Shown: in pieces, positions 38,995 through 60,031 of the stretch
Layout: each line of letters starts with the position of its first letter
Position numbering within the stretch: the first letter of the stretch is position 1
Assembly (NCBI RefSeq): GCF_902713615.1
Contig: NC_052153.1
Coordinates: 191,317,394-191,381,393, forward strand
Reading direction: 5' to 3'
DNA from: Scyliorhinus canicula
Taxonomy: Eukaryota
Length of the DNA: 64,000 bases
Program-made: the position numbers and the translations under genes
Notes under the pieces: generated by a model
Databases searched by the model: none
What the model was told of the DNA's origin: nothing
The model's input: the letters and a program-made list of their open reading frames with translations, nothing else

Positions 38995-39718
38995 TCCTCC
39001 AGTGTTTTTCATCTCTCTCACTCGCTGCTCCTTCTCACTTGGCACTGAAATGCAGAAGTTACTCGAAGTGAACTTCTGGTGAAATTCTCAAGATATTAAT
39101 CACTGTTGCTCAATTTAGCAGCGAATGTGATGTCCGCTTGCGGTGAGCAGGAGCTGAGATGTTTATTTAAAACTCGGAAATTTGGCACAAACCCCAGCAT
39201 TTGTAGAGAAGGAGAGATTCTGCATCGGCTTTCAATCTCGTCCTCAGACTGTCCATCACGTTCCATAGCGATCAAATTGATTAGTGGGGAGGAAGGGTGT
39301 TGGGACGATGGTGCACAAGTAACCCACTCCTATGTATCGTGCGGCACACCAGAGGTAAAATACGCGCTGTCTGCTGATTTCCCCATTGCCGTCTGCAGCC
39401 AGTCGTACACAAGCTGCGAACATCGGAAGGGGGGTGTGGCCATCTAAAATGGCCGCTCGCATAGATCGCTGGGAAATTTGGCCAAGCCCGAGTACAGACA
39501 GGCTGCCGCCTGCAAATAAACAAAAGCTGCAGCGCAGACGTATGCAGAAACTAACACAGGAGAAAAGCCATTAAAAGGCCAACCCGGGACAATGGATTCC
39601 AGGTAGAAACTGACAATAAGCGGCAGACTCAGCGGCGCCTGCTTTCCTTATTTGGGAAGGCCTACGTGCTTCGGACACAAGAGACTATGGCCGACCGGGA
39701 CCCGTCCGGCCATCAAGG
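38995..39718 (-). promoter_or_regulatory. Putative upstream/promoter region of gene A (left half of a split bidirectional region)
   Basis: About 80 bp upstream of the ATG is homologous to the gene B upstream sequence (TTCTGCATTTCAGTG..GGAGCAGCGAGTGAGAGAG). CpG-containing stretch with GGGTGTGGC (KLF/Sp-like) and AAAATGGCCGC (YY1-like) near 39430-39456. Motif matches alone are weak evidence. Confidence 0.35.
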
Positions 39719-39943
39719 TGTGGTAGTCACCACTATATGTATATATGACATATATGAGAAGTAATACGGTAAGGCTCCGCCCAGTAGGCGGAGTATAAAT
39801 GTGTGTGCACACCGAGCTGCAACCATTTCGGCAGCAGCTGCAGGAGGGAACACATCTCTGTGTAATAAACCCTCGATTACTCTCTACTCTCGTCTCGTCG
39901 TAATTGATAGTGCATCAATTTGTTAAGCAGAGATTTTACAGCG

Positions 39944-42558
39944 ATGGACCTCCGTATCAAGCCTGATCGCCTGCAGCTGCACCCTCAAGCAGACAACACC
40001 ATGTCGACCTTCGACCACTGGCTAGCTTGCTTTGAAGCCTACATCGGATCAGCGACAGAACCACCCTCAGAAGCACAGAAACTCCAGACCCTGTACTCAC
40101 GGGTGAGCTCCAATATTTTTCCCCTTATCCGGGACACGCCCACCTACAATGAGGCCATGGCGCTTCTGAAAGAGAGCTACATCCGGCCGATCAACAAACT
40201 CTACGCCAGGCACCTCCTGTCCACGTGGCAACAACTCCCCGGTGAGTCATCGGAAGGTTTCTGGCGCGCCCTGCACGCCCTGGCGAGGGACTGCGAATGC
40301 CAGGCAGTTTCGGCCGTTGAACATTCCGAACTCCTAATCAGGGACACTTTCATTACGGGCATAGGGTCAGCGTACATCCGCCAGCGCCTCTTCGAAGGGA
40401 GTACGCTCGACCTCGTGGCGATCAAGAAACTCGAGACCTCACTAATGGTAGCCTCTCATAATGTACAAGCGTACGCCCCCGACCGCACAGCGCCCCCCCT
40501 CCTGGACTTCGTGGACTCCACCAGCGACTGCCCCCCAGCCAACGCCAGGGAGCCCAGGTGCTATTTCTGTGGGCAGACAAAGCACCCAGGGCAACGCAGC
40601 CCAGCGCGGAGCGCAATCTGCAAGGCCTGCGGGAAGAAAGGACATTTCTCTGCCGTGTGCCAGGCCGGATCGATCGCCGCTGTATCCAGGCCCATTGTTC
40701 CTGCACCTCCCACGTGCGACCCGTGGGCGCCGCCATTTTCGTCCCCGCAGCCCACGTGCGGCCCGTGGGCGCCGCCATCTTCCTTGCATCAGAACACGTG
40801 CGGCCCATGGGCACCGCCACCTTCCCCCCATCAGACCTTTTGTGGCCTGTGGGCGCTGCCATCTTTAGCGGCACCCGCCACGTGCGCCCCGTGGGCGCAG
40901 CCACCTTCGGCACCATTTTGGACGGCGCGTCAGGACCCCTGCTCATCGGGCACTTCATCAGGCCGCTCATCGCCCGCAACCGCTGCCGACCAGCCCGGGG
41001 CCCGTCAACACCAGCCGCAGCTCGCCTCCATCACGCTCGACCAGTCCCGGCCACACAACCTCGCAACAGCGACAACAACGGTGAAGGTCGATGGCCAGAA
41101 GACACCTTGCCTTCTCGACTCCGGGAGCACGGAGAGCTTCATCCACCCGATACGGTAAGGAGCTGCTCCCTCGTGTTACACCCCATTACCCAACGAGTCC
41201 GGGGGTACTGCATCGCCACCCCCACTGTCCAGGGCATAGAGTTCAGCAACTTCCGGCTCTACGTCCTCCCCAACCTCTGCGCTGCCTTGCTACTCGGCCT
41301 GTACTTCCAGTGCAACCTCCAAAGTCTAACTCTGAAATTCAGCGGGCCCCTTCCACCCCTCACCGTATGCGTCATTGACTACAGTCAGACCATCAATTGG
41401 TACACGCAGCTCGACGCGCACCCCCTCCCATGCATATCTGATATGGTCAATCAGATTGCACAGTACCGGATCTTCTCTACAGTGGACCTGAAATCTGCCT
41501 ACCACCAGTTCCCCATCTGCAAGGCGGACCACCCGTACACTGCGTTCGAAGCAGACGGCCGTCTTTACCACTTCCTTAGGGTTCCCTTCAGCGTCGCTAA
41601 TGGGGTCTCGGTCTTCCAACAAGAAATGGACCGAATGGTTGACTGGTATGGGCTGCGGGCCACCTTCCCGTACCTCGATAGTGTCACCATCTACGGCCAC
41701 AACCAGCAGGACCACGACGCTAACCTTTTCAAATTTCTCCACACCGCCAAACTCCTGAACCTAATCTATAAGAAGGAGAAGTGCGTGTTCAGCACCAACC
41801 GCTTAGCCATCCTCGGCTATGTGGTGCAAAATGGAGTTCTAGGGCCCGACCCCGACTGCATACGCCCGCTCATGGAACTCCCCCTCCCCCACTGCCCCAA
41901 GGACTTCAAACGATGCCTGGGGTTCTTCTCATACTATGCCCAGTGGGTCCCTAACTATGCGGACAAGGCCCGCCCACTCATTCACTCCACAGTTTTCCCC
42001 CTGACGGCTGAGGCTCACCAGGCCTTCAACCGTATCAAGGCCGACATCGCCAAGGCCGCGATGCACGCGGTCGACGAGACCCTCCCCTTTCAAGTTGAGA
42101 GCGATGCATCAGACGTCGCTCTGGCCGCCACCCTCAACCAGGCAGGCAGACCCGTGGCATTCTTTTCCCGCACCCTCCATGCCTCCGAAATTCAGCACTC
42201 CTCCATCGAAAATGAGGCCCAAGCCATCGTTGAAGCTGTGCGGCATTGGAGGCATTACCTGGCCGGCAGGAGATTCACTCTCCTCACTGACCAACGGTTG
42301 GTTGCCTTCATGTTCAATAACACACAGCGGGGCAAGATCAAAAATGATAAAAATCTTGAGGTGGAGGATCGAGCTCTCCACCTACAATTACGAGATTTTG
42401 TATCGCCCCGGTAAGCTCAACGCGCCTCCCGATGTCCAATCCCGAGGTACATGTGCCAGCGCACAAAGGACCGACTCCGGGCTCTACACGATGGTCTCTG
42501 TCACCCAGGGATCACCCGGTTCTTTCACTTCATAAAGGCCCGCAACCTACCCTACTCC
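39944..42558 (+). pseudogene. Gypsy gag-pol, 5' part (gag, PR, RT with N-terminal deletion, RH, start of IN)
   Basis: ORFs 39920-41158 and 40558-42414; integrase HH motif LHDGLCHPG, cut at 42558. Confidence 0.88.
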
Positions 42559-43006
42559 GGATTTTCGGCGGGAGCAGGGGCCTGTCGGGAAGGTGAGTGT
42601 GTGCCTTTAAATTTGCTTGCCTTTCAGCGGGAGTGGCCTCTGGATTTTCGGCGGGAGCAGGGTGTTAACATGCACTAGATGCTGTGGTCTGAAGAGGCAA
42701 GAGTTCAGCTCCTTTTTCACCGACACACCTTTAATGGTTCAAACTCACTCTGCACAGAGCTCTACAGATCATCACAAGCTCCAGAGTCCACCTGAAGCCC
42801 CTTTACATATCAGTGTCAATCATTGAACACTTAACATAAATGAGACAATCATTGAACACTTAACATAAATGAGACAACTAATTGCAATGTCTCTTAACCC
42901 ATTACTTAACAGTCTCCCCTTCCTTGGGAAAAAAAAACAATTAGGTAAAAACAACATTTCAAGAAACTAACATTTCAAGAAACTAAAAGAAGAAGAAAAA
43001 AAACAT

Positions 43007-46000
43007 TCACAGAAACAGGCGCCCTTCATTCACGATATCTAATAGTTTCTGTGAACTAGCCCCTCTTTTCGTGAAACAGTCTGACAGTTGATAGCTACTG
43101 TCAACCCATTTAATTTTTGTTATTTCTCCTCTGTCCAACATCTGCTTTAAATTTGCGATGTCTATCCGTAACCTCTTTTCATTGACACTTTTTGTAGATT
43201 GCACATTTTCCCACAGAGATTTATTGTCAATGTGACAGTCAATAGGTATATTACCTAAATCCTCTAATCCCAAAATTTCTGTCAATATCTGACCTATATA
43301 AAAGGCCATATCCACCGCTTCCACTAAGCTTAATGTCTCAGCAGCCAAAGTGCTTTTTTAAAAATAAATTTAGAGTACCCAATTATTTTTCCAATTAAGG
43401 GGCAATTTAGCATGGCCAATCCACCTACTCTGCACATTTTTTGGGTTGTGGGGGCGAAACCCACGCAGACACGGGGAGAATGTGAAAACTCCACACGGAC
43501 AGTGACCCAGAGCCGGGATTGAACCTGGGACCTCAGCGCCGTGAGGCAGCTGTGCTAACCACTAGGCCACCGTGCTGCCCTGCCAAAGTGTTTTTGACCA
43601 CTCTCCTTATTTTCTTTGTTTCCCACACAAGAGGGCAACATTTACCATTGTTCCCCAAAAGGAAAATTATAAAACCTGCTGCGCTTGAAACTCCATCACA
43701 TAAATTTGCATAGGACACATCACTATAAACTATGAGTTTCAAATGCCTAGGATCACCTAAAACAGGGAACTTCAAAACACACTCCTGCATTTTTAGTTTG
43801 GCCAACACTTTATTTGCTCTTATTATATCTTCCACTTTGGGATCATTCATCTTTGTACTCAACTCTAAAACATCAAAACTCACGTCCGGTCTAGTCTGTC
43901 TTCCTAACCAGTTCAGTTGCCCAATTAAACTTCTCAGTTGCTCTTTTTCTATCTTCGAAACCATTGCGTCTTTTTGTGAAACCCGGCGACGACTAATTGC
44001 TATTGGACTGATGCTTTCCAAGTAAGATTGCTGATGTAAAGTTGCCCCTAACTGAGTCTGTCCTATTTCCAAACCAATATATTTAAATGCACCGGAAGCC
44101 TGACTTCCAACCCTGAATTCTTTCCTCAAACCAGAGATTATAATAGCTTCAAAATCACTAGTCCCACCCCACAAAAAATCATCGACATGCATCATGAAGA
44201 TGCCAGCAAGATTTCCTTTATAGTGCCAGTAAAACATTGCAGGATCTGCTTTCAACTGGCAACAGCCTAACTTTAACAAGACTGACCTCACCGAAAAGTA
44301 CCACACTCTCGATGCATCATTTAATCCATATACACATTTGTTCAACTTCCAGAGTACCCCTTCTGTGTTAGCTGCTTCTTTAGGAGGACGGAGAAAAATG
44401 TCTCTCTGGAGCTGATGCCCCTGAAAAAAGGCAGCTTTTATATCTATAGATTTACATTCCCATGCCTTTGTGGCTAATAGAGCCAAGAAGATCTTTAAAA
44501 TAACCTTTCCTGCTGTAGGTGAATCTACCCTTAAGTCCTGATCGTCTAAGTTTTCTTCAAATCCCCTTGCCACAAGCCTGGCCTTTGCCTTATAAGTTCC
44601 ATCTGGAAGAACCTTTTCTGTACAAATCCATCTGTGGGATAGAGCTCTTTGTCCCCTATCCGTACTTCCGTGTATACCCCAAATTCACTCCAACTATGTA
44701 ATTCTTGCTGTTTAGCATCTTTGATAACTTTTTCATCTAATTTATTTGAAGCCACCAAAATCTCACGTGCATGTGGGCTTCTACTTCTATTAGTATTCGT
44801 AGTCTTACTCCTGTTCCGAGATCTTGATAAACTACGTCCCCTTTCCTGCCTGGTATCTCGTTCTGTACTGCTACTGCTTGATCTTTCTCTTCTATAGCGG
44901 GATGTCCTTTCAATAGTTCTTGACCTTTTCCTGCGAACCTGTTCACTATCCGATGTACTACCTGAATTATGTCTTACATAAGGCCGTACATTATGTCTTA
45001 AAGCTCTGCGAATTCTTTCAGAGACTTCTGCTTCCTAAAAAGCTTTTCTACTGCTATGTAACACGTTTAAATGTTCAGCAAAACCTGAGCTAATTGTAGT
45101 CCCTTCCCAAGCTGGAGGCTGGTCATCAAAAATGGAGGGAATTTTAGGATTTCTACCAAACACTAATTGATAAGGACTATAGCCCCCAACCATCTGCAAT
45201 GAATTATTTGCATGTACCGCCCATGCTAAAGCTGAATTTAGCGTGCAGTTTGGTCGATCTCCCAAAATTTTCCGAAGCATGTCATCGATAACAGCATGAT
45301 TTATTTTGCAGACACCATCACTAAACAGGCTTTCGGCAACCGTGTTCATAACTCTGATATTCACGTTTTCACACATATCCCTAAACTCATCATCAGCAAA
45401 TTCTCCCCCATTGTCCGTAAAGAATTTTGCTGGTGGACCCATTCCTGTCCCGATCCATTTTTCCACAATTTTGTCCAAAATTACTCTCTTTTCTTTACTT
45501 CGTACAATCGGTGATTGACTAAATCTGGTAGCTAAATCTACAAAATTCAAAATAAATATATTATTTGCTTTATCCCAGATCTTAAGGTCCATGGCCACAA
45601 TGTTATTAAAATCCCTGGCCCAAGGTAGGGTTACTATTGGTCGTGCTGGTGTCCTTCTGTACTTCCTGCAAACTTCACAGCGATCACTAACCTGTTCTAT
45701 CAGCTTAGAATAGTCATCATCCCTTACCCCTGCATCCTTTAATAAATTTTTCAGCCTCCGAGGAGACGGATGTGCAAATTGCCAATGCAGTTTTACTACA
45801 ATAAGCTTTTTACCAGCTAAAGTCGCATTATCAACTGTCATTAATACATCCTTAACCACTCTACTTGAAACATTATTTATCAATAATGGAATACAATAAT
45901 GTCCCGACTGTGTAAATTGTAAGTCCACCGTCTTTCCAAAAACTGTTGCCTTATCCTGTTCCATATCCAGCTTCATGTGTGCTTTCTTCATCGACGGTCT

Positions 46001-47199
46001 GCTCAGAAGCAAAGGTATCTCACTTGATACAACATCTGTGCTAATAAAATGATTCACTCCAGCAATATTGCAAGGGATCACCACTCTTTTCAGCGACTTC
46101 AGAGTATTAGCATCCCCAAACCTGAACTTTTAAATTCCTTAACCTTGTTACGATTTTCAGCATCCAATGAGTCCAGATAACATTTTAACCAGTCAATCCC
46201 ACACACAGTAAATGTGCAGCCACTGTCCAATACAACACAGTTAAAGGATTCTGCAACCAACACCCTCATTACCGACGTAAAACAGCTTGTTAATAGGACA
46301 ATGCCTTCTTTCTGGTCACTATCTTTTTCCTCTTCTGACTCTTCCGTGTCATGTGTCGCTTCAAATACTCGATCATAATGAGTTGGACAGCTGAAAGCAT
46401 AATGGTATTGAGAGTCACATCGAAAACATCGATTTATCATGCCCCGTGCATTTCTGGGGTTCATCTTCCTATTGTAGGTTCTAACTGGGTTTCTGTCTTC
46501 ATAATTTCCTTGTCTCGGTCTTCTTTTATAGTCTTGAGGCCTGTTCGTAGCCATACGATTTTGCCATCCTGTTAGTAGTGTATCTTCCATATTCTGCCTT
46601 ATAGCAGGCTCACCTATTTGGGTCATCAGAGCCATTGGAATCGAATGTTTCCCCAAAAATCTTTTTAAAGCTGTTGTCATCTGTTCGAATAAGGTATCGT
46701 TATCCGTAAACTGAACTCCTGTCAAAACCAGGAGCCTATCCATGTTGCTCACTCTAGCACAGTCAAGTAATTTAATGGCCATCACAGATTGTGGCAATTC
46801 CAGCCTGTGTTTCTGCAGCTTTTTATATAGTCTGCCAAATTCCATTATATACTCTTCCATAGATACAGCCTCCATTTTCAGGAACTTATCAAAATCCGAC
46901 CATGCTTCATACGCACTTAACAAGTCATCTTTCTTATAAATCTTGTCCATATAAAGTAATAAAGTCGCCAGACCTTCTTCTGAGTCTAACTCTTCCAACT
47001 CCACCTCAGAAAGCACTTTGTTTCGGATTTTACTGCCATATGGTAAAGAAAGAGCCAATGCCATACCTTGTTTTCTCTTTCCTAAAGCAGTCACCTTAGT
47101 CCACATAACTACTGCACTTCTCCATTGGTCGTATGATTCCCTTTCAGAAAATAGGGGAGGATAATCATAACCAGGCATCTTTGTCCTGGGTTCAGCCAT
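43007..47199 (-). pseudogene. Copia gag-pol (gag with CCHC, PR LDSG, IN, RT, RNase H), disrupted
   Basis: ORFs 46099-47199, 45035-46084, 43533-44573 and 43007-43348; the integrase catalytic Glu position reads Lys (VCKINH); stop and frameshifts. Confidence 0.88.
43353..43581 (-). mobile_element. Short HE1-related SINE inserted in the Copia RNase H
   Basis: TSD core GCCAAAGTG (43344-43352 / 43582-43590); same family as 6099-6322. Confidence 0.85.
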
Positions 47200-47295
47200 G
47201 TTTCCCTTTTTGTTTCACTCCTAGGTTTGATCTGGAAAAATTGTATCTTTCAAGCCTTCACATTTACACATCAACCATTCTCTGCTACCATTGTT

Positions 47296-50200
47296 TTTTT
47301 TTAAATAATTTTTATTGAAAAATTTTGATTTTATACAACATTGACGCACCTTAGTAAAATACCGAAAATAACAATAATATTAACAGTCATATACATTCGC
47401 CCCAAGCCCATGAACAACCCAGCATTTTAACAACAACGCAAATGAACACACTATAAAGTTACAGAATAAACACTACAATAATGCACCCCCCCCACCGGGT
47501 TGCTGCTGCTATTGACCAAGATACCTATCTCTGAGCCAGGAAGTCCAGAAAAGGCTGCCATCGTTTATAGAACCCTTGTATTGATCCTCTCAGGGCAAAT
47601 TTGACCTTTTCCAATTTTTAATAAATCCCGCCATGTCACTGATCCAGGTCTCCACGCTTGGGGGCCTTGCATCCTTCCATTGTAACAGAATCCTTTGACG
47701 GGCTACTAGGGACGCAAAGACCAGGACACCGGCCTCTTTCGCCTCCTGCACTCCCGGCTCTACCGCAACTCCAAAAATCGCGAGTCCCCACCCTGGTTTG
47801 ACCCTGGATCCAACCACCCACGACACCGTCCCCGCCACCCCCTTCCAGAATTCTTCCAGTGCTGGGCATGCCCAGAATATATGGGCGTGGTTCGCAGGAC
47901 TTCCCGAACATCTGGTGCACCTGTCCTCACCCCCAAAGAACCTACTCATCCTAGTCCCGGACATGTGGGCCCGGTGCAGCACCTTAAATTGGATGAGACT
48001 AAGCCTCGCACATGAGGAGGAAGAGTTGACTCTCTCCAAGGCCTCCGCCCAAGTCCCGTCCTCTATCTGCTCCCCGAGTTCCTCCTCCCATTTAGCCTTC
48101 AGCTCCTCCACTGACGACTCCTCCACCTCCTGCATTACTTTATAGATGTCAGACACCTTCCCCTCTCCTACCCACACCCCCGAAAGCACTCTGTCCATCG
48201 TCCCCTGCGAGGGCAGCAAAGGGAATCCCCCTACCTGTCGCCGAGCAAACGCCTTTACCTGCAGGTATCTGAACATGTTCCCTTGGGGAAGGCCAAATTT
48301 ATCTTCCAGTTCCCCCAGGCCCGCAAACCTCCCGCCAATAAACAGGTCCCTCAATTTGCTGATGCCCGCCCTTTGCCACCCCCTGAATCCCCCATCCGTG
48401 TTCCCCGGGATGAACCGATGGTTGCCACCCAGTGGAGCCTCCATCGAGCCCCCTGTTTCCCCCCGATGCTGTCTCCACTGTCCCCAGATTCTTAGGGTCG
48501 CCGCCACCACCGGGCTCGTGGTAAACCTCTTAGGGGAGAGCGGCAACGGTGCCGTTACCATGGCACCCAGGCTCGTACCTCTACATGACGCCATCTCCAT
48601 TCTTTTCCACGCCGCCCCTCCCCCCTCCATCACCCATTTACGCACCATTGACACATTGGCTGCCCAATAGTACCCCAGAAGGTTGGGCAGCGCCAGCCCG
48701 CCTCTATCCCTTCCTCGCTCCAGGAACACCCTCCTCACTCTCGGAGTCCCATGTGCCCACACAAAGCTCAGAACACTGCCGGTCACCCTCCTAAAGAAGG
48801 CCCTGGGGATAAATATGGGCAGGCATTGAAAAAGGAACAAGAACCTCGGAAGCACCGTCATTTTGACGGACTGTACCCTCCCAGCCAATGACAATGGCAG
48901 CATGTCCCACCTCCTGAACTCCTCCTCCATCTGATCTACCAGTCTGGTGAAGTTATGCTTGTGGAGAGTCCCCCAGTCCCTGGCCACTTGCACCCCCAGG
49001 TACCTAAAGCTCTCCCCTGCCCGCCTAAGCGGGAGCCTACCAATTCCTTCCTCCTGATCTCCAGGGTGCACCACAAACACCTCGCTCTTGCCTAAGTTTA
49101 ATTTATAACCTGAAAAGGTCCCAAACTCAGCCAGCAACTCCATCACTCCCGGCATCCCTCCCACCGGGTCCGCCACATACAGTAACAGGTCGTCGGCATA
49201 CAACGACACCCTATGTTCCTCTCCACCTCGCACCAAACCTCTCCACTTCTCTGAATCTCTCAACGCCATCACCAGCGGCTCGATTGCCAATGCAAACAAC
49301 AAGGGGGACAGGGGGCAACCCTGCCTGGTCCCTCGGTAAAGCCGGAAGTACTCCGACCTCCTCCTATTTGTGGCCACGCACGCCATCGGGGCCTCATATA
49401 GCAGCCTTACCCATCTAATGAACCCTTCACCAAATCCAAACCTCCCCAACACCTCCCACAGGTACCCCCACTCCACTCTATCGAAGGCCTTCTCCGCATC
49501 CAGCGCCACCACTATCTCTGCCTCCCCCTCAATCGCCGGCATCATGATGACATTCAATAATCTCCGCACATTCGTGTTCAGCTGCCTTCCCTTCACAAAA
49601 TCTGTCTGGTCCTCGTGCACAACCCTTGGCACACAGTCCTCTATCCTGGTGGCCAGGATTTTTGCCAGCACCTTAGCATCCACGTTGAGGAGAGATATGG
49701 GCCTGTATGAACCACACTGCTGGGGGTCCTTGTCCTTCTTTAAAATTAACGAGATCAGCGCCCGCGACATCGTCGGGGGCAAAGTCCCCCCTTCCCGCGC
49801 TTCGTTGAGTGTCCGCACCAGCAAGGGGCCCACTAGGTCCACAAACTTTTTATAAAATTCCACCGGGAACCCATCCGGACCCGGTGCCTTCCCTGACTGC
49901 ATCTGCCTGATCCCCTTAACTAGCTCCTCCAGCTCAATCGGCGCACCCAGCCCCTCCACCTTCTCCTCCTGCACCTTCGGGAAAGAAAGCCCGTCGAGGA
50001 ACCTCTCCATTCCCCTTCTCTCCCCCGTTGGCTCCGACCGGTACAGTTCCCCGTAAAAGTCCTTGAAGACCTCATTCACCTCTACCCCCTTCCGCACCAC
50101 ATTCCCACTCTTGTCTCTCACTCCAGCAATCTCCTTAGCCACATCCCGCTTACGGAGCTGATGAGCCAGCATCCTACTCGCCTTTTCACCATGTTCGTAC

Positions 50201-53004
50201 ACTGCCCCTTGTGCCTTTCTCCACTGTGCCTCCGCCTTTCTAGTGGTCAGCAAATCAAATTTAGCCTGCAGGCTGCGCCTCTCCCCCAACAGTCCCTCCT
50301 CTGGTGCCTCTGCATACCTCCTGTCCACCTCCAGCATCTTTCCCACCAGTCTATCCCTCTCACTCCTCTCGCTCCTCTCCCTGTGTGCCCGGATGGATTT
50401 CAGCTCCCCATGAATTACTGCCTTCAGGGCTTCCCAGACCATCCCCACCTGAACCTCCCCCGTATCATTCACCTCAAGGTACCCCTCAATACTTGCCCGG
50501 ACCCTCCTACACACCTCCTCCTCCGCCAACAACCCCACATCCAACCGCCACAACGGACGTTGGTCCCGCACCTCCCCCATCTCCAACTCAATCCAATGCG
50601 GAGCGTGGGCGGAGATTGCAATGGCCGAATACTCGGCTTCCTCCACTCTCGGAATCAGTCCCCTACTCACCACGAAGAAGTCTATCCGAGAGTAGACCCT
50701 ATGTACGTGGGAGAAGAAAGAGTACTCGCGTGCCCTCGGCCTCACAAACCTCCATGGATCCACTCCACCCATCTGATCCATAAACCCTCTTAGTACCTTG
50801 GCCGCCGCTGGCCTCCTACCCGTCCTAGAGCTGGACCGATCCAGTGAAGGATCCAACACCATATTGAAGTTCCCCCCCCATGATCAGACCTCCCGCCTCC
50901 AGATCCGGGACCCGTCCCAACATACGCCTCATAAAGCCCGCATCGTCCCAATTTGGGGCATACACACTAGCCAGTACCACCTTCTCTCCTTGTAGCCTGC
51001 CCCTAACCATAACATACCTACCCCCCTTATCCGCCACCACCTCCGATGCCTCAAACAACACATTTTTCCCCACCAGAATCGCCACTCCCCGGTTCTTCAC
51101 ATCCAACCCAGAGTGGAAAACCTGCCCCACCCATCCCTTCCTCAGGCGGACCTGGTCCGCCACCCTCAGGTGGGTCTCCTGAAGCATTGCCACACCTACC
51201 TTTAGCCCCTTCAGGTGAGCCAGTACCCTCGACCGCTTCACCGGCCCATTCAACCCTCTCACATTCCAGGTGACCAACCGGATCAGAGGGCGTCCCGCCC
51301 CCCTCCCCCATCGGCTAGCCATAGCCCGTCGACTGCCCGCCCCAGGCCAGCACCCCCTGCCCGACCCCGTCCCCATAGCGACAACCCCTCACCTCTGTCC
51401 CCCCAGCCCCCACCAGCTCCTTCTTGACCCTACCAGCAGCAACCCGGTATTCCCCTTTCCCCCCCTCCCTTCCCCCCAGGCTAGGAACCCTCCCAGCCGC
51501 GAACCGTCCTCCATTGTACTTCCGTGGGTCAGCTAACTTCTGCTGACCCCGGAAACTCCCGCCAATAACCCGACCCCTCCCAAAGTGGGATCATCCCCCA
51601 ACCTATCCCTCCTCCAGGCACCGCTCCAGCGCGGGGAAGAACCAGTTAAGGCCCCGCCTCCCCCGTCACCGTCTCCACCCCCCAGCCCCGCAGCGCGGGA
51701 AACCAGAGGAAAGCCCGCGCTTTCGCCCTGCCCCACCACACCTTTCTGACGCAGCTCCCAAATATCAGCCCCACTCCATACCCCCACTCCGGCATAGAAT
51801 ACAACATACCCCCCCGACTCTCCCCGCAAGATACACAGCCCAAACAATGCCCCACAGCACAAGAACAAAAACATAGCAGAACAACCCCTCCGTAAATAAC
51901 CCTATCAAAATTGCAAATGTACTAAAACAAGAAGAAAAAAACAGAAGAAAAAGAGAACACAGCAACAGCAGAATCTAGCACTAATATCTTACAGTCGACC
52001 TCGCAACCCCCAACCCCTAGTTCAAGTCCAGTTTCTCCGTCCGCACGAAAGCCCACGCCTCCTCCGGGGAATCGAAATAATGGTGCCGGTCCGAATAAGT
52101 TACCCACAGGCGTGCGAGCTGCAACATTCCGAACTTTATCTTTTTTCTATAAAGCACCTCTTTCGTCCGATTAAATCCGGACCGCCGCTTAGCCACCTCC
52201 GCACTCCAGTCCTGGTAGATCCGCACTAACCCATTCTCCCACTTGCTGCTCTTCACCTTCTTGGCTCAGCGCAGCACACACTCCCGATCACTGAACCGGT
52301 GGAACCTCACCAGCACCGCACGCGGGGGTTCATCTTCCTTGGGCCAGCACCCTGTGCACTCCCTCCAGCTCCAAGGGCAGATGGAAAGACCCGGCCCCCA
52401 CTAGCGAGTTCAGCATTGTAGCCACGTAGGCTGTCAGGTCCGATCCCTCCAGCCCCTCCGCAAGGCCCAAGATCCGCAGGTTTTTCCGCCTCATGCGGTG
52501 ATCAAGCTCCTCGAAGCGTTCCTGCCACTTCTTGTGGAGTGCCTCGTGCCCCTCCACCTTACTCACGAGGACCACGGCCTCCTCCTCTCGTTCCGTGGCC
52601 TGCGTCTGCAACTCCTTGATGGCAGCACCCTGGGTGGACTGAATCTCTGACAGCCTTCTGTTCGTTTCCTGCAGAGAGCTCAGTACTTCATCCTTGAATT
52701 CTTTAAAGCAGCGCAGGAGATCAGTTTGTTGCTCCTGGGCCCAGAGCCTCCATTCCTCTGGAGCTCTGTCGGTGGCCATCTTGGATCCCTTCCCCCGTTT
52801 TCTCTGAGGAGCTGCTGCTGTTTTTTCCCCCTTTCCACTCCGAGTTCGAGGCATGGACTGCGGGGAAAGTCGTTCAGCACACCTTCCCCCACCGGGAGAC
52901 GTCGAAACATTTCCGTTTTGGGCTCTCAAAAGAGCCGAAAAGTCTCTTTAAAACGGGAGCTCCCAAATGTGTGGCTTCCTACTCCATCACAGCCATCGGA
53001 AGTC
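47296..53004 (-). mobile_element. Full-length L1-clade LINE, copy 2 (5.7 kb), inserted at the Copia LTR/PBS junction
   Basis: 16-bp TSD CTCTGCTACCATTGTT (47280-47295 / 53005-53020). ORF1 52854-52017 has a frameshift and a stop. ORF2 from 51322 has a 1090-aa open stretch and only two frameshifts, both in homopolymer runs. Confidence 0.96.
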
Positions 53005-53270
53005 CTCTGCTACCATTGTTAACATGTACTAGATGCTGTGGTATGAAGAGGCAAGAGTTCAGCTCCTTTTTCAACAACACACCTTTAATGGTTCAAACGC
53101 ACTCTGCACAGAACTCTACAGATCATCACAAGCTCCAGAGTCCACCTGAAGCCCCTTTACATATCAGTGTCAATCATTGAACACTTAACATACATGAGAC
53201 AATCATTGAACACTTAACATAAATGAGACAACTAATTGCAATGTCTCTTAACCCATTACTTAACACAGGG

Positions 53271-53625
53271 GCCTGTCGGGAAGGTGAGTGTGTGTCTTTA
53301 AATTTGCTTGCCTTTCAGCAGGAGCAGCCTCCGGATCTTCGATGGGAGCAGGGGCCTGTCGGGAAGGTGAGTGTGGGCCTTTCAATTTGCTTGCCTTTCA
53401 GCGGGAGTGGCCTCCGGATTTTCGGCGGGAGCAGGGACCTGTCGGGAAGGCGAGTGTGGGCCTTTCAATTTGCTTGCCTTTCAGCGGGAGCAGCCTCCGG
53501 ATTTTCGGCGGGAGCAGCGGACTGTCGGGAAGGTGAGTGTGGGCCTTTCAATTTGCTTGCCTTTCAGCGGGAGCAGCCTCCGGGTTTTCGGTGGGAGCAG
53601 GGGCCTGTCGGGAAGGTGAGTACCT
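53271..53625 (+). repeat. 83-bp tandem monomers of the CR1 5' UTR (plus ~1.25 units at 42559-42662)
   Basis: CTGTCGGGAAGG recurs at 53273, 53356, 53439, 53522, 53605. Confidence 0.92.
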
Positions 53626-53765
53626 GTATATAAGTTGGGCGGTTGCTAAAACCGAGACACTACACTTGTAGTGTCCCCCCACCCTTCCACCTCCTCTAAC
53701 CTAAGGGTTTGAGGGAATATCAGGTGAGCTCTTCCTTTCTTTTTCTTGTTTTTTATCTAGAGGGG

Positions 53766-54690
53766 ATGGCAGGGAAGGCAGTACAATGCCCCTCCTACAG
53801 AATGTTTGAGGTGAGGGACGCCGTCGGTGTCCCTGCTGATTTCATCTGTGGGAAGTGCACCCAACTCTAGCTCCTCAAAAACCGTGTTAGGGAACTGGAG
53901 CTGGAGCTGGATGAACTTCAGATCATTCGGGAGGCAGAGGGGGTCATAGATAGGAGCTTCAGGGAGGTAGCTACGCCAAAGAATAAAGATAGATGGGTGA
54001 CGGTGAGAGGGGCTGGGAGGAAGCAGTCAGTATAGGGATCCCCTGTGGTCATTCCCCTTAGTAACAGGTATACCGCTTTGGATACTGTTGGGGGGGGGGA
54101 CTTTCCAGGGGTCAGCCATGGGGTACAGGTCTCTGGCAGAGTCTGTCCCTGTTGCTAAGAAGGGAAGAGGGGAGAGGAGAAGAACATTAGTCATTGGAGA
54201 CTCCATAGTTAGGGGGATAGATAGGAGATTCTGTGGGAACGAGAGAGACTCGCGGTTGGTGTGTTGCCTCCCAGGTGCCAGGGTCCGCGATGTCTCGGAT
54301 CGTGTTTTCGGGATCCTTAAGGGGGAGGGGGAGCAGCCCCAAGTCGTGGTCCACATAGGTACCAATGACATAGGTAGGAAAAGGGATAGGGATGTAAGGC
54401 AGGAATTCAGGGAGCTAGGGTGGAAACATAGATCCAGGACAAACAGAGTTATTATCTCTGGGTTGTTACCCGTGCCACGTGCTAGTGAATCGAGGAATAG
54501 GGAGAGAGAGCAGTTCAACACATGGCTACAGGGATGGTGCAGGAGGGAGGGTTTCAGATTCCTGGACAATTGGGGCTCATTTTGGGGTAGGTGGGACCTC
54601 TACAAACAGGAAGGTCTACACCTGGACCAGAGGGGTACAAATATCCTGGGGGGGAGGTTTGCTAATGCTCTTCGGGAGGGTTTAAACTAG
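53766..54690 (+). pseudogene. CR1 ORF1: zinc finger, leucine zipper, SGNH/GDSL esterase
   Basis: VQCPSY..ICGKC, RVRELELELDEL, LVIGDSIVRG, VHIGTND, EGLHL; in-frame TAG and a frameshift. Confidence 0.85.
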
Positions 54691-57658
54691 TTCAGCAGGG
54701 GGTTGGGAACCTGAATTGTAGCTCCAGTACACAAGAAGTTGAGAGTAGTGAGGTCATGAGTAAGGTTTCAAAGTTGCAGGAGTGTACCGGCAGGAAGGAA
54801 GGTGGTCTAAAGTGCGTCTACTTCAATGCCAGGAGCATCCGGAATAAGGTGGGTGAACTCACCAGGTTAGTACCTGGGACTTCGATGTTGTGGCCATTTC
54901 GGAGACATGATAGAGCAGGGACAGGAATGGTTGTTGCAGGTTCCGGGGTTTAGATATTTCAGTAATCTCAGGGAAGGTGGTAAGAGAGGGGGAGGGGTGG
55001 CATTGTTAGTCAAGGACAGTATTACGGTGGCTGAGAGGACATTTGATGAGGACTCGAATACTGAGGTAGTATGGGCTGAGTTAAGAAACAGGAAAGGAGA
55101 GGTCACCCTGTTAAGGGTTTTCTATAGGCCTCCGAAAAGTTCCAGAGATGTAGAGGAAAGGATTGCAAAGATGATTCTGGATAGGAGCAAAAGTAACAGG
55201 GTAGTTGTTATGGGGGACTTTAACTTTCCAAATATTGACTGGAAACACTATAGTTCGAGTACTTTAGATGAGTCCATTTTTGTCCAATGTGTGCAGGAGG
55301 GTTTCCTGACGCAATATGTAGATAGGCCAACGAGGGGCGAGACCGTATTGGATTTGGTACTGGGTAATGAACCAGGACAGGTGTCAGATTTGGAGGTAGG
55401 TGAGCACTTTGGTGATAGTGACCACAATTCGATTACGTTTACTTTAGTGATGGAAAAGGATAGGTATATACCGTAGGGCAAGAGTTATAGCTGGGGGAAA
55501 GGCAATTATGATGTGATGAGGCAAGATTTAGGATGCATCGGCTGGAGAGGAAAACTGCAGGGGATGGGCACAATGAAAATGCGGAGCATGTTCAAGGAAC
55601 AGCTACTGCGTGTCCTTGATAAGTATGTACCTGTTAGGCAGGGAGGAAGTGGTCGAGCGAGGGAACCATGGGTTACTAAAGCAGTTGAAACACTTGTAAA
55701 GAGGAAGAAGGAGGCTTATGTAAAGATGAGACGTGATGGTTCAGTTAGGGCGCTTGAGAGTTACAAGTTAGCTAGGAAGGCTCTAAAGAGAGAGCTACGA
55801 AGAGCCAGGAGAGGACATGAGAAGTCTTTGGCAGGTAGGATCAAGGATAACCCTAAAGCTTTCTATAGATATGTCAGGAATAAAAGAATGACTAGGGTAA
55901 CAGTAGGGCCAGTCAAGGACAGTAGTGGGAAGTTGTGCGTGGAGTCCGAGGAGATAGGAGAGGTGCTAAATGAGTATTTTTCGTCTGTATTCACACAGGA
56001 AAAAGACAATGTTGTCGAGGAGAATACTGAGATACAGGCTACTAGACTAGAAGGGCTTGAGGTTCATAAGGAGGAGGTGTTAGCGATTCTGGAAAGTGTG
56101 AAAATAGGTAAGTCCCCTGGGCCGGATGGGATTTATCCTAGGATTCTCTGGGAAGCTAGGGCAGAGATTACTGAGCCTTTGGCTTTGATCTTTGATCTTT
56201 AAGTCATCTTTGTCTACAGGAATAGTGCCAGAAGACTGGAGGATAGCAAATGTTGTCCCCTTGTACAAGAAGGGGAGTAGAGATAACCCCGGTAACTATA
56301 GACCAGTGAGCCTTACTTCTAGTGTGGGAAAAGTCTTGGAAAGGTTTATAAGAGATAGGATGTATAATCATCTGGAAAGGAATAATTTGATTAGAGATAG
56401 TCAACATGGTTCTGTAAATGGTAGGTCGTGCCTCACAAACCTCATTGAGTTCTTCGAGAAGGTGACCAAACAGGTGGATGAGGGTAAAGCAGTTGATGTG
56501 GTGTATATGGATTTCAGTAAAGCGTTTGATAAGGTTCCCCACGGTAGGCTATTGCAGAAAATACAGAGGCATGGGATTCAGGGTGATTTAGCAGTTTGGA
56601 TCAGAAATTGGCTAGCTGATAGAAGACAGGAAGACAGGTGGTTGATGGGAAATGTTCAGACTGGTGTCCAGTTACTAGTGATGTACCACAAGGATCTGTT
56701 TTGGGGCCGCTGCTGTTTGTCATTTTTATAAATGACCTGGAGGAGGGCGTAGAAGGATGGGTGAGTACATTTGCAGATGACACTGAAGTCGGTGGAGTTG
56801 TGGACACTGCAGAAGGATGTTACAAGTTACAGAGGGACATAGATAAGCTGCAGAGCTGGGCTGACAGGTGGCAAATGGAGTTTAATGCAGAAAAGTATGA
56901 GGTGATTCATTTTGAAAGGAATAACAGGAAGACAGAGTACTGGGCTAATGGTAAGATTCTTGGTAGTATTGACGAGCAGAGAGGTCTCGGTGTCCATGTC
57001 CATAGATCCCTGAAAGTTGCCACCCAGGTTGAGAGGGTTGTTAAGAAGGCGTACGGTGTGTTAGCTTTTATTGGTAGAGGAATTGAGTTTTAGAGCCATG
57101 AGGTCATGTTGCAGTTATACAAAACTCTGGTGCGGCCGCATTTGGAGTATTGCGTGCAGTTCTGGTCGCCTCATTATAGGAAGGATGTGGAAGCATTGGA
57201 AAGAGTACAGAGGAGATTTACAAGGATGTTGCCTGGTATGGAGGGAAGATTTTACGAGGAAAGGCTGAAGGACTTGAGGCTATTTTCGTTAGAGAAAAGA
57301 AGGTTAAGAGGTGACTTAATTGAGGCATACAAGATGATCAGAGGATTAGATAGGGTGGACATTGAGAACCTTTTTCCTCGGATGGTGATGTCCAGCATGA
57401 GGGGACATAGCTTTAAATTGAGGGGAGATAGATAGAGGACAGATGTCAGAGGTAGGTTCTTTACTCAGAGAGTAGTAGGGGCGTGGAATGCCCTACCTGC
57501 AACAGTAGTGGACTCGCCAACACTAAATGCATTCAAATGGTCATTGGATAGGCATATGGACGATAAGGGAATAGTGTAGAGGGGCTTTAGAGTGGTTTTA
57601 CAGGTCGGCGCAACATCGAGGGCCGAAGGGCCTGTACTGCGCTGTACTGTTCTATGTT

Positions 57659-58740
57659 CTACTCCATTGCGGAAGTCAGGGCGGTCACCAAAGTCTACCA
57701 GGTCTGCGCTGAGTGCAAACCGCATTTCTACCGGCCAGACCGAGCACACCTGGTGCAGGCCTCCCATCCCTTTGAACGCCTCAGCATGGACTTCAAAGGG
57801 CCCCTCCCCTCCTCCGACCGAAACGCATACTTCCTGAACGTGGTCGATGAATACTCCAGATTCCCCTTTGCCGTCCCATGCCCTGATATGACGTCTGCCA
57901 CAGTCATCAAACCCCTCAATAGCATCTTCACTCTATTTGGTCTCCCCGCTTACGTCCACAGCGATCGGGGATGCTCCTTTATGAGTGATAAGCTGCGTCA
58001 ATTCCTGCTCAGCAAGGGCATTGCCTCGAGGAGGATGACCAGCTACAACTCCCAGGGAAACGGGCAGGTGGAGAGGGAGAACGCGAAGGTCTGGAACGCC
58101 GTCCAGCTGGCCCTACGGTCTAAAAATCTCCCGGTCTCCCGCTGGCAGGAAGTCCTCCCCGACGCCCTCCACTCCATCCAATCGCTACTTGGCACTGCGA
58201 CTAATGCAACCCCCCCCCCCATGAAGGGCTCCTTGCCTTCCCTAGGAAGTCCACCTCCGGGGTTTCGCTCCCAACGTGGCTGGCAGCTCCAGGACCCGTT
58301 CTCCTCCGCAAGCACATGTGGCTCCACAAGGCGGACCCGTTAGTCGAGAGGGTACAGCTACTCCATGCAAACCCGCAGTGGTGTACCCTGACGGCTGCCA
58401 AGACACAGTCTCCCTCAGGGACCTGGCACCAGCTGGTCCCCCCCCCCCCACCTCCAACTGCCCCGGCGCCACCCATCCTCCCCCCAGCGCACCTCACCAC
58501 AGCCCCCGCTCCAGGATGATCCGCCCTCTCATGGGTTCCACCCGGGGATGAAGATGAGGACTACACGCTCCCGGAGTCACCGGCGACCAAGCCTGCATCA
58601 TCACCGGGACTACGGCGCTCACAACGGGGGATCAAGGTACCCGACCGGCTAAATTTGTGAACTTTTCCCCAAACTGTACACTTTAAAAAGGCTCACATAC
58701 ATGCAAATAGTTTTTCCACCACCCCTGCTGGACTCTTTTT
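57659..58740 (+). pseudogene. Gypsy integrase, 3' part
   Basis: Resumes as YSIAEV..CAEC; SMDFKGP, HSDRGCSF, GNGQVERENA (DDE core); frameshifted downstream. Confidence 0.9.
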
Positions 58741-58994
58741 AACAGGGGGTGAATGTGGTAATCACCACTGTTTGTCTATATGACGCATATGAGAAGTAAT
58801 ATGGTAAGGCCCCTGTACTACAGGCACGGGGATAGATCCCTGCCTGCTGGCTCCGTCCAGTAGGCAGAGTATAAATGTGTGTGCTCACCGAGCTGCAGCC
58901 ATTTCAGCAGCAGCTGCAGCAGGCCACACATCCCTGTTGTAATAAAGCCTCGATTACACTCCACTCTCGTCTCGTCGTAATTGATAGTGCATCA

Positions 58995-60031
58995 CAAGGG
59001 GTCCGACCCCAATTGGTCAGGATAGATCAGGGTGATCGAGACCCTATCCATCCATTGGACCTTCACCTGGGACCACCCAAAAGGGTACGAAAGCTAGAAG
59101 GACGAAAGGTGCTGCGTAGCCCACCACTCGCTCTCTCGACAGCCAAGAACAACGGTGAATCCATCACCAACCAAGGGGAGAACCATCCACGCCATCCACA
59201 GAGGGACCAGAGCCGAGGACACAGGCATCCAGCTACAAGAACTCCAGCACTGCCACACTACCAGATCCTAGATAAGGCCATATCTGCTCTGTACTTGCCA
59301 GTCACCTGGAAGTTAAGTTAGGGTCATTTATAAGTGTATAAGTTCTGTCTTTGGTAACTGCACTTCCCTTTTTACGCTGTGGCAATGTAGTTCCCGTGCG
59401 GCTCTGCACAGCGAAATGATTCCGTCTGTGACATTTCGTACAGGTCTCGCTGAAGGCATTGTTTCACTGGGTGGGCGTGGCCACAGCTTTAACATGTTGC
59501 GTCGTGTGCAAAATGCCACCGTCGGGAGCACGCCGTTTTTTCAAGTGCGCCACGGAATCAGCCTGAGATCTGTTACGAAACAGTCAATTGTTTCACCTGC
59601 CTTTCTGGACACTTTTTGGGAATGGCAGATTGGCCATGCCAAGTATCGGGCCCGGGAATGCCTGCCCTCAAGAGATGGGGGTGATGGGAAGTTCAAAGAG
59701 CACCTACGTTGGGTGCAATGGGGGAGGGGGAGGTCCGTGAATACTCTCCCTGCATGGGGAGATGACCTCGTCAGTGCGGGAAAGGATGGAAGTGTGGCCC
59801 CGGTGACGCTATAGTCCCGTTAAACCGTGCCCGTTAACCCTGTTTGCCTCTCGACAATTTTTCTGCCACTTGTTTTGAATTAAACAGGTTTCCTGTTATT
59901 CAGTAAATTCAGGAAGCTGTCTCATCCATTTAGGGCGATTTCACAAGTGTGAACAAATATCTTGAGTAATTTCTGCATTTCAGTGTCAATAGACAAGGAG
60001 CAGCGAGTGAGAGAGGTGAAAGACTGAAGGA
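58995..60031 (+). promoter_or_regulatory. Putative upstream/promoter region of gene B (right half)
   Basis: Proximal ~80 bp shared with gene A; GGGTGGGCGTGGCC near 59469; TTCCTG/CAGGAAG ETS-like cores near 59890-59916. Confidence 0.35.

What the first reader, a model, noticed from the sequence alone, without database searches (positions are those of the whole stretch)
39719..58994. Four-level retroelement nest (Gypsy > CR1 > Copia > L1, plus SINE) with every TSD preserved, splitting the shared promoter
Seen: Gypsy (TSD CAAGG) has its integrase cut by a full CR1 (TSD CTACTCC). The CR1 5' UTR holds a Copia (TSD CAGGG), which holds an L1 (16-bp TSD) and a SINE. Removing the nest joins the two ATGs with only ~1,756 bp between them. 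Inference: a once-compact bidirectional promoter was uncoupled, and each insertion landed in or next to a promoter-bearing part of the previous element, suggesting a persistent open-chromatin sink.
Basis: partly seen in the sequence, partly recalled or inferred. Interest (0 to 1): 0.7.

Follow-up and report, generated by a model that had tools for sequence, protein, structure and literature searches.

The report
Nested retrotransposon stack between two shark genes
A 19-kb pile of five jumping-gene copies, each inserted inside an older one, really does sit between the start exons of two back-to-back catshark immune-receptor genes, but this is ordinary in a genome that is two-thirds repeats, and nothing shows it broke a shared promoter.

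Summary
All five elements and all five target-site duplications (TSDs) are present: Gypsy 39719-58994 (CAAGG), a CR1-like LINE in its integrase zinc finger (CTACTCC), a Copia in the CR1 83-bp 5' monomers (CAGGG), and an L1 (16 bp) and a SINE (9 bp) in the Copia. LTR divergence fits the order: Gypsy K2P 0.103, Copia 0.029.

The nest lies between the signal-peptide exons of two divergent Siglec-15-like paralogues. Cutting it out leaves exactly 1,756 bp from ATG to ATG. Gene A is annotated catshark LOC119970764. Its exon 1 (39012-38928) is joined to a V exon 31 kb away, and RNA-like contigs leave the genome at that donor.

- The start sites would be about 1.6 kb apart, beyond the usual 1-kb limit for bidirectional promoters, and the two spacer halves are unrelated.
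- Each gene keeps 0.65-0.96 kb of its own upstream DNA, and gene A is still transcribed.
- Only 2 of 4 nested insertions hit promoter-bearing parts (P about 0.085, post hoc).
- The L1 site fits the usual TT|AA endonuclease target.
- The genome is 68% transposable elements.

Verdict: a well-preserved but ordinary nested insertion, of low interest. The orthologous empty site could not be fetched.

The parts
39719..58994 (+). Ty3/Gypsy LTR retrotransposon, the outermost layer (4,169 bp of its own sequence). 5' LTR 39719-39917, 3' LTR 58754-58994; gag ORF 39920-41158; RT/RNase H ORF 40558-42414; integrase 42415-42558 and 57666-58343.
   Evidence: RVT_1, RT_RNaseH, rve in the order RT-RNH-IN; LTR K2P 0.103.
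39714..39718 (.). Gypsy TSD CAAGG, left copy (right copy at 58995-58999).
42559..57658 (+). CR1-like LINE, second layer (4,492 bp of its own sequence: 42559-42662 plus 53271-57658). 83-bp 5' monomers; ORF1 with a GDSL/SGNH esterase 54088-54690; endonuclease 54907-55476; RT 56192-57093; no poly(A); TSD CTACTCC at 42552-42558 and 57659-57665.
   Evidence: loose end at 42558 shows other Gypsy copies running straight on into the sequence that resumes at 57666 here.
42663..53265 (-). Ty1/Copia LTR retrotransposon, third layer. LTRs 42663-42911 and 53017-53265; integrase 45035-46084 lies upstream of RVT_2 43533-44573 on the - strand; initiator-tRNA-Met-type primer-binding site next to the 5' LTR; polypurine tract next to 42912; TSD CAGGG at 42658-42662 and 53266-53270.
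   Evidence: LTR K2P 0.029.
47296..53004 (-). L1 LINE, fourth layer. ORF2 47590-50862, with the endonuclease start in a separate overlapping frame 50825-51376; ORF1-like coiled-coil ORF 52330-52929; short poly(A); 16-bp TSD at 47280-47295 and 53005-53020.
   Evidence: (E=6e-145 to human L1 ORF2p).
43353..43581 (-). tRNA-headed SINE inside the Copia pol gene. TSD GCCAAAGTG at 43344-43352 and 43582-43590.
   Evidence: (similar to at least 8 other copies in the window).
38928..39064 (-). Gene A (LOC119970764) exon 1: 5' UTR plus signal peptide. ATG at 39012 (NCBI model) or 38994 (reader); donor GTAGGT at 38927-38922.
   Evidence: P0200 residues 1-28 match 39012-38929 at 100%. RNA-like contigs lie on 38927-39014 and 38927-39040, then run on elsewhere. 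Also.
59964..60098 (+). Gene B exon 1: 5' UTR plus signal peptide. ATG at 60032; donor GTAGGT at 60099-60104. It is 85% identical to exon 1A, in inverted orientation.
   Evidence: S. torazame P0206 has a 20/22-identical N-terminus and the same splice product.
39065..39713 (.). A-side half of the original intergenic spacer. Single-copy DNA, CpG observed/expected 0.81.
   Evidence: (unique-level depth in DNA run X27; no RNA-like cover).
59000..59963 (.). B-side half of the original intergenic spacer. CpG observed/expected 0.63; no similarity to the A-side half.
7580..7975 (-). Gene A V-set exon, reached from exon 1A across an intron of about 31 kb filled with transposable elements.
   Evidence: P0200 residues 30-161, 99.2%.
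60984..61379 (+). Gene B V-set exon, 885 bp downstream of exon 1B.
   Evidence: its words are held by RNA-like runs.

Best explanation
This is a passive stack of successive retrotransposon insertions in repeat-tolerant intergenic DNA, not a functional system or a targeted 'sink'.

Order of events:
1. A Gypsy element integrated into the roughly 1.6-kb spacer between two divergently transcribed Siglec-15-like receptor paralogues.
2. A CR1-like LINE then retrotransposed into the Gypsy integrase.
3. A Copia integrated into the CR1 5' monomers.
4. An L1 and a SINE retrotransposed into the Copia. Their relative order is unknown.

Each event left its own mechanism's signature: 5-bp TSDs for the two integrase-driven LTR elements, a short TSD without poly(A) for the CR1, and a long TSD plus A-tail at a TT|AA site for the L1 and its likely passenger SINE.

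The net effect is that the two first exons are now 21 kb apart instead of 1.8 kb. Each gene kept its own proximal upstream DNA, and gene A is still transcribed and correctly spliced.

Shown: the anatomy, the order of nesting, the relative ages, the identity of the flanking exons, and transcription of exon 1A.
Inferred: that the insertions were neutral or tolerated, and that no chromatin targeting is needed to explain them.
For: - All TSDs and boundaries were read directly.
- The host sequence is restored across each insert. The integrase HHCC finger reads in frame. The 83-bp monomer register is kept. The Copia PBS matches the initiator-tRNA-Met 3' end across the L1 TSD.
- LTR divergence is 0.103 for the outer element against 0.029 for the inner one.
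- Domain content and order fit each family, and the L1 ORF2 matches human ORF2p at E=6e-145.
- Other Gypsy copies in a DNA run read straight through the CR1 site, which serves as a paralogous empty site (loose end at 42558).
- An independent DNA-like run bridges the Gypsy 5' junction with a 1,102-nt contig that differs at 5 positions (record 11).
- The rest of the window is equally repeat-rich: another L1 at 9213-14714, CR1 pieces, SINEs and a solo LTR.
- 68.14% of the catshark genome is transposable elements (PMC11979771).
- Exon 1A is covered by RNA-like contigs that stop at the GTAGGT donor, and NCBI's P0200 carries the exon 1A to V exon join.
Against: - Two of the four nested insertions do sit in or beside promoter-bearing parts (the CR1 5' monomers and the Copia 5' LTR/PBS edge), and the Gypsy itself landed between two gene starts. 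A mild preference for accessible DNA cannot be excluded with five events.
- The spacer has a somewhat raised CpG ratio (0.63-0.81 against 0.54).
- No chromatin, methylation or expression comparison with an empty allele was possible.
- Use of gene B's exon 1 rests on homology and on the S. torazame annotation, not on reads laid here.
Confidence: 0.8

Rival explanations
1. The spacer was a compact bidirectional promoter shared by A and B. The nest uncoupled it, and persistent open chromatin at successive promoters attracted each new insertion.
For: - Head-to-head first exons, 1,756 bp from ATG to ATG once the nest is removed.
- The Copia sits in the CR1 5' monomers and the L1 at the Copia 5' LTR/PBS edge.
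- The spacer CpG ratio is mildly raised.
- RNA-like runs X3 and X7 hold V exon B words but none of the exon 1A stretch. This is a weak hint that the two genes are not always co-expressed.
Against: - The conserved 5' blocks are 1,618 bp apart, more than the 1 kb of the usual definition.
- The spacer halves are not homologous to each other.
- The CR1 and SINE insertions are not promoter-adjacent, and 2 of 4 gives P about 0.085 post hoc.
- The L1 target fits the endonuclease motif.
- The Gypsy LTR divergence (0.103) is about as large as the A/B exon divergence (0.10-0.13), so a compact state may never have lasted long.
- Runs X1 and X5, from one sample, hold both exon 1A and V exon B.
Confidence: 0.1
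2. The nest has been co-opted. For example, the sense-oriented Gypsy 3' LTR, 1.0 kb upstream of gene B's ATG, acts as an alternative promoter or enhancer, or the 19 kb acts as a spacer or insulator that let the paralogues diverge in regulation.
For: - The 3' LTR has the same orientation as gene B and keeps a TATA-like box.
- B has diverged from A: V exon K2P 0.097, with the ligand-binding Arg of A replaced by Cys.
Against: - No reads were laid on the B side, so no LTR-initiated transcript has been seen.
- The LTRs are old (about 10% diverged) and the 5' LTR has lost 41 bp.
- All internal genes are broken.
Confidence: 0.06
3. Assembly artefact: repeat copies were wrongly chained together.
For: All layers belong to multi-copy families, as shown by high depth in DNA run X27.
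Against: - Five matched TSD pairs are present, and the host sequence is restored exactly across every insert.
- A contig from another individual bridges the Gypsy 5' junction (record 11).
- DNA-like run X25 covers the Gypsy interior at unique-level depth with no differences (records 12-16).
Confidence: 0.02

Closest known systems
Nested retrotransposon blocks, as first described in maize intergenic DNA (SanMiguel et al. 1996) and later used to order transposon ages in mammals by 'defragmentation' (both cited from my own knowledge)
   Same: Younger elements sit inside older ones, TSDs are intact, LTR divergence rises outward, and the stack lies between genes.
   Different: This stack mixes four superfamilies (Gypsy, CR1, Copia, L1) plus a SINE in a cartilaginous fish, and it lies between two divergent paralogous immune-receptor genes. 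Nothing differs mechanistically.
Bidirectional promoters of head-to-head gene pairs (usual definition: start sites less than 1 kb apart, often a CpG island; from my own knowledge)
   Same: Two divergently oriented first exons share a short unique spacer once the nest is removed.
   Different: The spacing is about 1.6 kb and the CpG enrichment is only mild. The genes are tissue-restricted immune-receptor paralogues, and no shared element or co-expression has been shown.
Shark Siglec-15-like activating receptor genes (annotated LOC119970764 in S. canicula; 'sialic acid-binding Ig-like lectin 15' in S. torazame and other sharks)
   Same: Genes A and B have the family's 21-23-residue signal exon with a phase-1 donor followed by a V-set exon. 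P0200 has a lysine in its transmembrane segment.
   Different: Gene A's first intron is about 31 kb of repeats, against 885 bp in gene B. Gene B has Cys where A has the ligand-binding Arg.

Membership tests
Ty3/Gypsy LTR retrotransposon | Direct LTRs ending TG..CA, flanked by a 4-6 bp TSD | tested here: met
   LTRs 39719-39917 and 58754-58994, TG..CA, TSD CAAGG on both sides.
Ty3/Gypsy LTR retrotransposon | pol domain order RT, RNase H, integrase | tested here: met
   RVT_1 and RT_RNaseH lie in 40558-42414. The HHCC finger is at 42460-42558 plus 57666-57720, and rve is in 57654-58343.
Ty3/Gypsy LTR retrotransposon | Primer-binding site after the 5' LTR and polypurine tract before the 3' LTR | tested here: inconclusive
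   A purine run (AGGGGGTGAA) abuts the 3' LTR. No recognisable tRNA-complementary site was seen after 39917.
Ty1/Copia LTR retrotransposon | LTRs with a 5-bp TSD, integrase upstream of a Copia-type RT (RVT_2) | tested here: met
   249-bp LTRs 97.2% identical, TSD CAGGG. On the - strand, rve (45035-46084) precedes RVT_2 (43533-44573).
Ty1/Copia LTR retrotransposon | Primer-binding site complementary to the initiator tRNA-Met 3' end | tested here: met
   TGGTAGCAGAG.ATGGTT lies next to the 5' LTR once the L1 and one TSD copy are read through. The tRNA 3' end is recalled from my own knowledge.
L1 LINE | ORF2 with an APE endonuclease and an L1-clade RT | tested here: met
   E=6e-145 to human L1 ORF2p over residues 153-904. 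R2 proteins reach only about 1e-23. Exo_endo_phos is found in 50825-51376.
L1 LINE | 3' poly(A), long TSD, TT|AAAA-like target | tested here: met
   A9 tail, 16-bp TSD, target ..TGTT|AACA...
L1 LINE | L1-type ORF1 | tested here: inconclusive
   A 199-aa ORF lies at 52330-52929, but it had no Pfam L1 ORF1 match.
CR1 LINE (CR1/L2 group) | APE endonuclease plus RT; ORF1 with an esterase domain in many members; no poly(A); short repeats at the 3' end | tested here: met
   GDSL/SGNH esterase, Exo_endo_phos and RVT_1 are all present. The tail ends ..TGTTCTATGTTCTA without an A-run. It is only distantly related to L1 ORF2p (E=5e-8).
CR1 LINE (CR1/L2 group) | Placement of the RT inside the CR1 clade, rather than L2 or Rex1, by phylogeny | not tested
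   No reference LINE set was available, so 'CR1-like' is the safe name.
tRNA-derived SINE | tRNA-like head, many copies, TSD | tested here: met
   The head reads like a tRNA (GGTGGCCTAGTGGTTAGC..GGTTCAATCCC), although ARAGORN did not call it. At least 8 related copies lie in the window. There is a 9-bp TSD.
Bidirectional (shared) promoter | Divergent start sites less than 1 kb apart | tested here: not met
   The conserved 5' blocks are 1,618 bp apart after excision, and the ATGs are 1,738-1,756 bp apart. The RNA-like contig reaches only 39040.
Bidirectional (shared) promoter | CpG island or shared regulatory element | tested here: inconclusive
   GC 0.51 and CpG observed/expected 0.63-0.81, against 0.54 for the window. 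There is no similarity between the two halves.
Bidirectional (shared) promoter | Co-expression of the two genes | not testable with these tools
   Only word shares are available. X1 and X5 hold both genes; X3 and X7 hold B only.

The most novel reading that the evidence does not exclude
The short spacer between the divergent Siglec-15-like paralogues is a germline-accessible region that repeatedly captured retroelements. The resulting 19-kb wedge insulated the two promoters from each other, which allowed gene B to drift in regulation and in ligand binding (Arg to Cys) while gene A kept the ancestral state.
Probability: 0.08. Interest if true: 0.45.

Novelty: new member of a known kind. Interest (0 to 1): 0.22.

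Why it matters
The locus is a clean textbook example. Five datable insertion events from five retroelement families are stacked in one place, each with its mechanistic signature intact. That makes it useful for ordering family activity in a shark genome and as an assembly-quality check.

It also fixes the true 5' structure of two Siglec-15-like receptor genes: their signal exons, the GTAGGT donors, and a 31-kb first intron in gene A.

It does not by itself reveal any new biology of promoters or chromatin. If a related shark holds the empty site, the locus would become a natural experiment on whether wedging 19 kb between divergent paralogues changes their expression.

Tried and rejected
1. I first took the signal-exon donor to be G|GTTACA (phase 1, but weak). 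The RNA-like contigs and P0200 show that the real donor lies 6 nt further on (A|GTAGGT), also in phase 1.
2. Searching with the V exon alone found no catshark protein because of the length window. Searching with the full-length relative P0003 did find one.
3. The orthologous empty site in S. torazame could not be read. P0201 is not on record. P0206 and P0205 are on record, but no DNA was served because the files are too large. No other gene is listed within 10 kb of the P0206 gene, but that says little.
4. I suspected a SINE in the gap 44574-45034 between the Copia ORFs. That stretch is only a Ser/Arg-rich linker with a broken frame. The SINE is at 43353-43581.
5. Rfam and tRNA scans added nothing for the nest.
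6. No chromodomain or other domain was evident in the ORFs downstream of the Gypsy integrase, so heterochromatin targeting could not be argued either way.
7. No second signal-exon-like sequence exists in the window, so gene A has no nearer first exon.
8. In one search the flanking halves of each interrupted element were joined, inside a script only, to serve as BLAST queries for other copies. Nothing was printed, the file was deleted, and I did not go on to test or restore reading frames.
Full report
**What is there**

ORF and Pfam scans show four coding retroelements in 39.7-59.0 kb:
- Gypsy-type RT/RNase H at 40558-42414 and integrase at 57654-58343, both on the + strand.
- Copia-type RVT_2 at 43533-44573 and integrase at 45035-46084, on the - strand.
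- A 1,090-aa LINE ORF2 at 47590-50862, on the - strand.
- A second LINE on the + strand, with a GDSL esterase ORF1 (54088-54690), an endonuclease (54907-55476) and an RT (56192-57093).

The repeat search found the two LTR pairs and an 83-bp tandem array that is split into two blocks 10.7 kb apart.

**Boundaries and TSDs, read directly**

- **Gypsy.** It spans 39719-58994. The LTRs are 199 and 241 bp and end TG..CA. They are 90.5% identical (K2P 0.103). The 5' LTR lacks a 41-bp piece that the 3' LTR and other genomic copies keep (loose ends at 39773). The TSD CAAGG is present on both sides.
- **CR1-like LINE.** It spans 42559-57658 with the TSD CTACTCC on both sides. It cuts the integrase between the His pair and the Cys pair of the HHCC finger. 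The two halves read ..LHDGLCHPGITRFFHFIKARNLPYS | IAEVRAVTKVYQVCAECK.. in one frame.
- **Copia.** It spans 42663-53265 with the TSD CAGGG. It lies 104 bp into the CR1, inside the monomer array, and the array's register is kept across the insert. The LTRs are 249 bp and 97.2% identical (K2P 0.029). The primer-binding site is of the initiator-tRNA-Met type, and a polypurine tract is present.
- **L1.** It spans about 47296-53004 with an A9 tail and a 16-bp TSD. The target was the Copia primer-binding site plus the first 4 nt of the 5' LTR. In the L1 sense it reads ..TGTT|AACA.., the usual TT|AA type of L1 endonuclease site.
- **SINE.** It spans about 43353-43581 in the Copia pol gene. It has a 9-bp TSD, extendable to about 14 bp with one indel.

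All coding elements are decayed. The Gypsy pol stops at 42412. The CR1 is in at least six ORF pieces. The L1 ORF2 is split into two overlapping frames near 50,825-50,862. The Copia pol is interrupted by the SINE and by a broken linker.

**Family assignments**

The L1 ORF2 matches human L1 ORF2p at E=6e-145. The other LINE matches it only at E=5e-8. It carries the esterase ORF1 and a tail without poly(A), typical of CR1-group elements. I did not run an RT phylogeny, so 'CR1-like' is the safe name. Domain order separates the Gypsy (RT-RNH-IN) from the Copia (IN-RT with RVT_2).

**Is it an assembly artefact?**

This is unlikely, for three reasons:
- There are five matched TSD pairs, and the host sequence is restored exactly across every insert.
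- In DNA run X27, reads from other Gypsy copies continue past 42558 directly into the integrase sequence that resumes at 57666 in the window. This is a paralogous empty site for the CR1.
- In the DNA-like run X25, a 1,102-nt contig with 5 differences spans 38701-39802. It bridges the Gypsy 5' junction in another individual.

**What flanks it**

Earlier notes of this scan named the genome (catshark) and the gene family (Siglec-15-like).
- The two V exons are at 60984-61379 (+) and 7580-7975 (-). They are 90.9% identical.
- The only two signal-peptide-like exons in the window lie right beside the nest, in inverted orientation and 85% identical: 59964-60107 (+) and 39064-38919 (-).
- Their peptides, MAVASVYVRLSTLLLSVPVLGY and MAMTTVYIGLSTVLLSTPLLGY, match the signal peptides of shark relatives.
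- Removing the nest and one TSD copy leaves exactly 1,756 bp between the ATGs at 38994 and 60032.

**Are these exons used?**

- NCBI's catshark protein LOC119970764 (P0200, 353 aa) maps with residues 1-28 on 39012-38929 (100%) and residues 30-161 on 7973-7578 (99.2%). Residue 29 is the split codon. So gene A's first intron is about 31 kb.
- RNA-like contigs of one sample (X1, X5) lie on 38927-39014 and 38927-39040 without a difference. They then run on for 45 and 54 letters that lie nowhere in the 5.9 kb laid. These runs give no cover on the unique DNA at 39170-39760. This fits splicing at the donor A|GTAGGT, with 1 nt of ambiguity equal to the first G of the V exon.
- The same donor is conserved in gene B (60099-60104).
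- S. torazame 'Siglec-15 isoform X1' (P0206) starts with a 20/22-identical B-like signal peptide and shows the same splice product.
- V exon B words are held by RNA-like runs.

**Is it a shared promoter?**

- After excision, the conserved 5' blocks are 1,618 bp apart. This is beyond the 1-kb limit normally used for bidirectional promoters (my knowledge of the definition).
- The two spacer halves (39065-39713 and 59000-59963) are single-copy where I could check. They show no similarity to each other at a word size of 7.
- Their CpG observed/expected ratio is 0.81 and 0.63, against 0.54 for the window. This is mild enrichment, not a clear island.
- The Gypsy went in 655 bp and 964 bp from the conserved blocks, so each proximal promoter stayed with its gene.
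- The Gypsy LTR divergence (0.103) is about as large as the A/B divergence in the conserved blocks (0.097-0.13). A/B similarity also stops within 10-70 nt of each exon edge, which suggests an older duplication. The compact state may therefore have been short-lived relative to the paralogues' history.

**Is it a 'sink'?**

- The Copia (in the CR1 5' monomers) and the L1 (at the Copia LTR/PBS edge) are promoter-adjacent. The CR1 is 2,840 bp into a 4,169-bp Gypsy and more than 1 kb from either LTR. The SINE is in the pol gene. Neither of these is promoter-adjacent.
- If promoter-bearing parts make up about 13% of each host element, hitting them in 2 of 4 events has P about 0.085. The category was also chosen after the fact.
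- The window outside the nest is just as crowded. It holds a 5.5-kb L1 at 9213-14714, CR1 pieces at 15.4-20.7 kb, L1 pieces at 23.6-25.2 kb and 33.8-38.8 kb, many SINEs and a solo LTR.
- The catshark genome is 68.14% transposable elements, 34.2% of it LINEs (PMC11979771). Most new insertions must therefore land in older elements.
- Other nested elements have been noted in this genome by the scan. One example is a hAT inside a Gypsy gag, 211 kb before this window's start. I did not check that note.

**Verdict**

The thing itself is an ordinary nested insertion. Its position between two divergent receptor paralogues is real. The 'split bidirectional promoter' and 'open-chromatin sink' readings are unsupported by anything testable here. 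The decisive test is the orthologous locus in S. torazame or other sharks. It could not be run because no DNA was served for those assemblies.

**Procedural note**

In one search the halves of each interrupted element were joined inside a script as BLAST queries only. Nothing was printed, the file was removed, and no frames were restored.

Noticed in passing
window 60934-60959 and 8003-8028, compared with 60071-60096: A 26-nt copy of the 3' end of the signal exon (23/26 identical) sits just upstream of the splice acceptor of both V exons. It is older than the A/B duplication and is not part of an open frame there. Its origin is unexplained.
   Followed up: partly
window 7976-38927 (- strand): Gene A (LOC119970764) has a first intron of about 31 kb made almost wholly of repeats, including a near full-length L1 at 9213-14714 that is 77% identical to the nest L1. 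Its paralogue B has an 885-bp first intron.
   Followed up: partly
window 59964-60107 / 38919-39064 and 60934-61394 / 7565-8029: A/B similarity ends abruptly within 10-70 nt of each exon edge, although the exons are 82-91% identical. This suggests an old duplication with constrained or homogenised exons rather than a recent one.
   Followed up: partly
window 39773 (5' LTR) compared with 58808-58848 (3' LTR): The Gypsy 5' LTR lacks a 41-bp piece that the 3' LTR keeps and that other genomic copies also keep (loose ends in all four runs).
   Followed up: yes
window 42559-42662 and 53266-53680: The CR1 5' end is an array of about 5.5 monomers of 83 bp. Other genomic copies extend further upstream (loose ends at 42555), so this copy begins inside a monomer.
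   Followed up: partly
window 6607-7105: A tandem array of 10 copies of a 50-bp unit at 99% identity, downstream of gene A's V exon.
   Followed up: no
window 1861-2069: A solo LTR of the same Gypsy family, 77-80% identical to the nest LTRs.
   Followed up: no
window 30304-30357 and 31103-31156: Two short copies of the last 54 bp of the CR1 tail (83% and 96% identical), in inverted orientation about 0.8 kb apart. They may be tails of SINEs or of truncated CR1 copies that use the same 3' end.
   Followed up: no
runs X3 and X7 compared with X1 and X5: Some RNA-like runs hold V exon B words (0.38-0.50) but none of the exon 1A stretch, while one sample holds both. This is a weak hint that A and B are not always expressed together.
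   Followed up: no
window 61319-61321: Gene B reads YHCCVELNI where gene A and P0200 read YHCRVELNI.
   Followed up: partly
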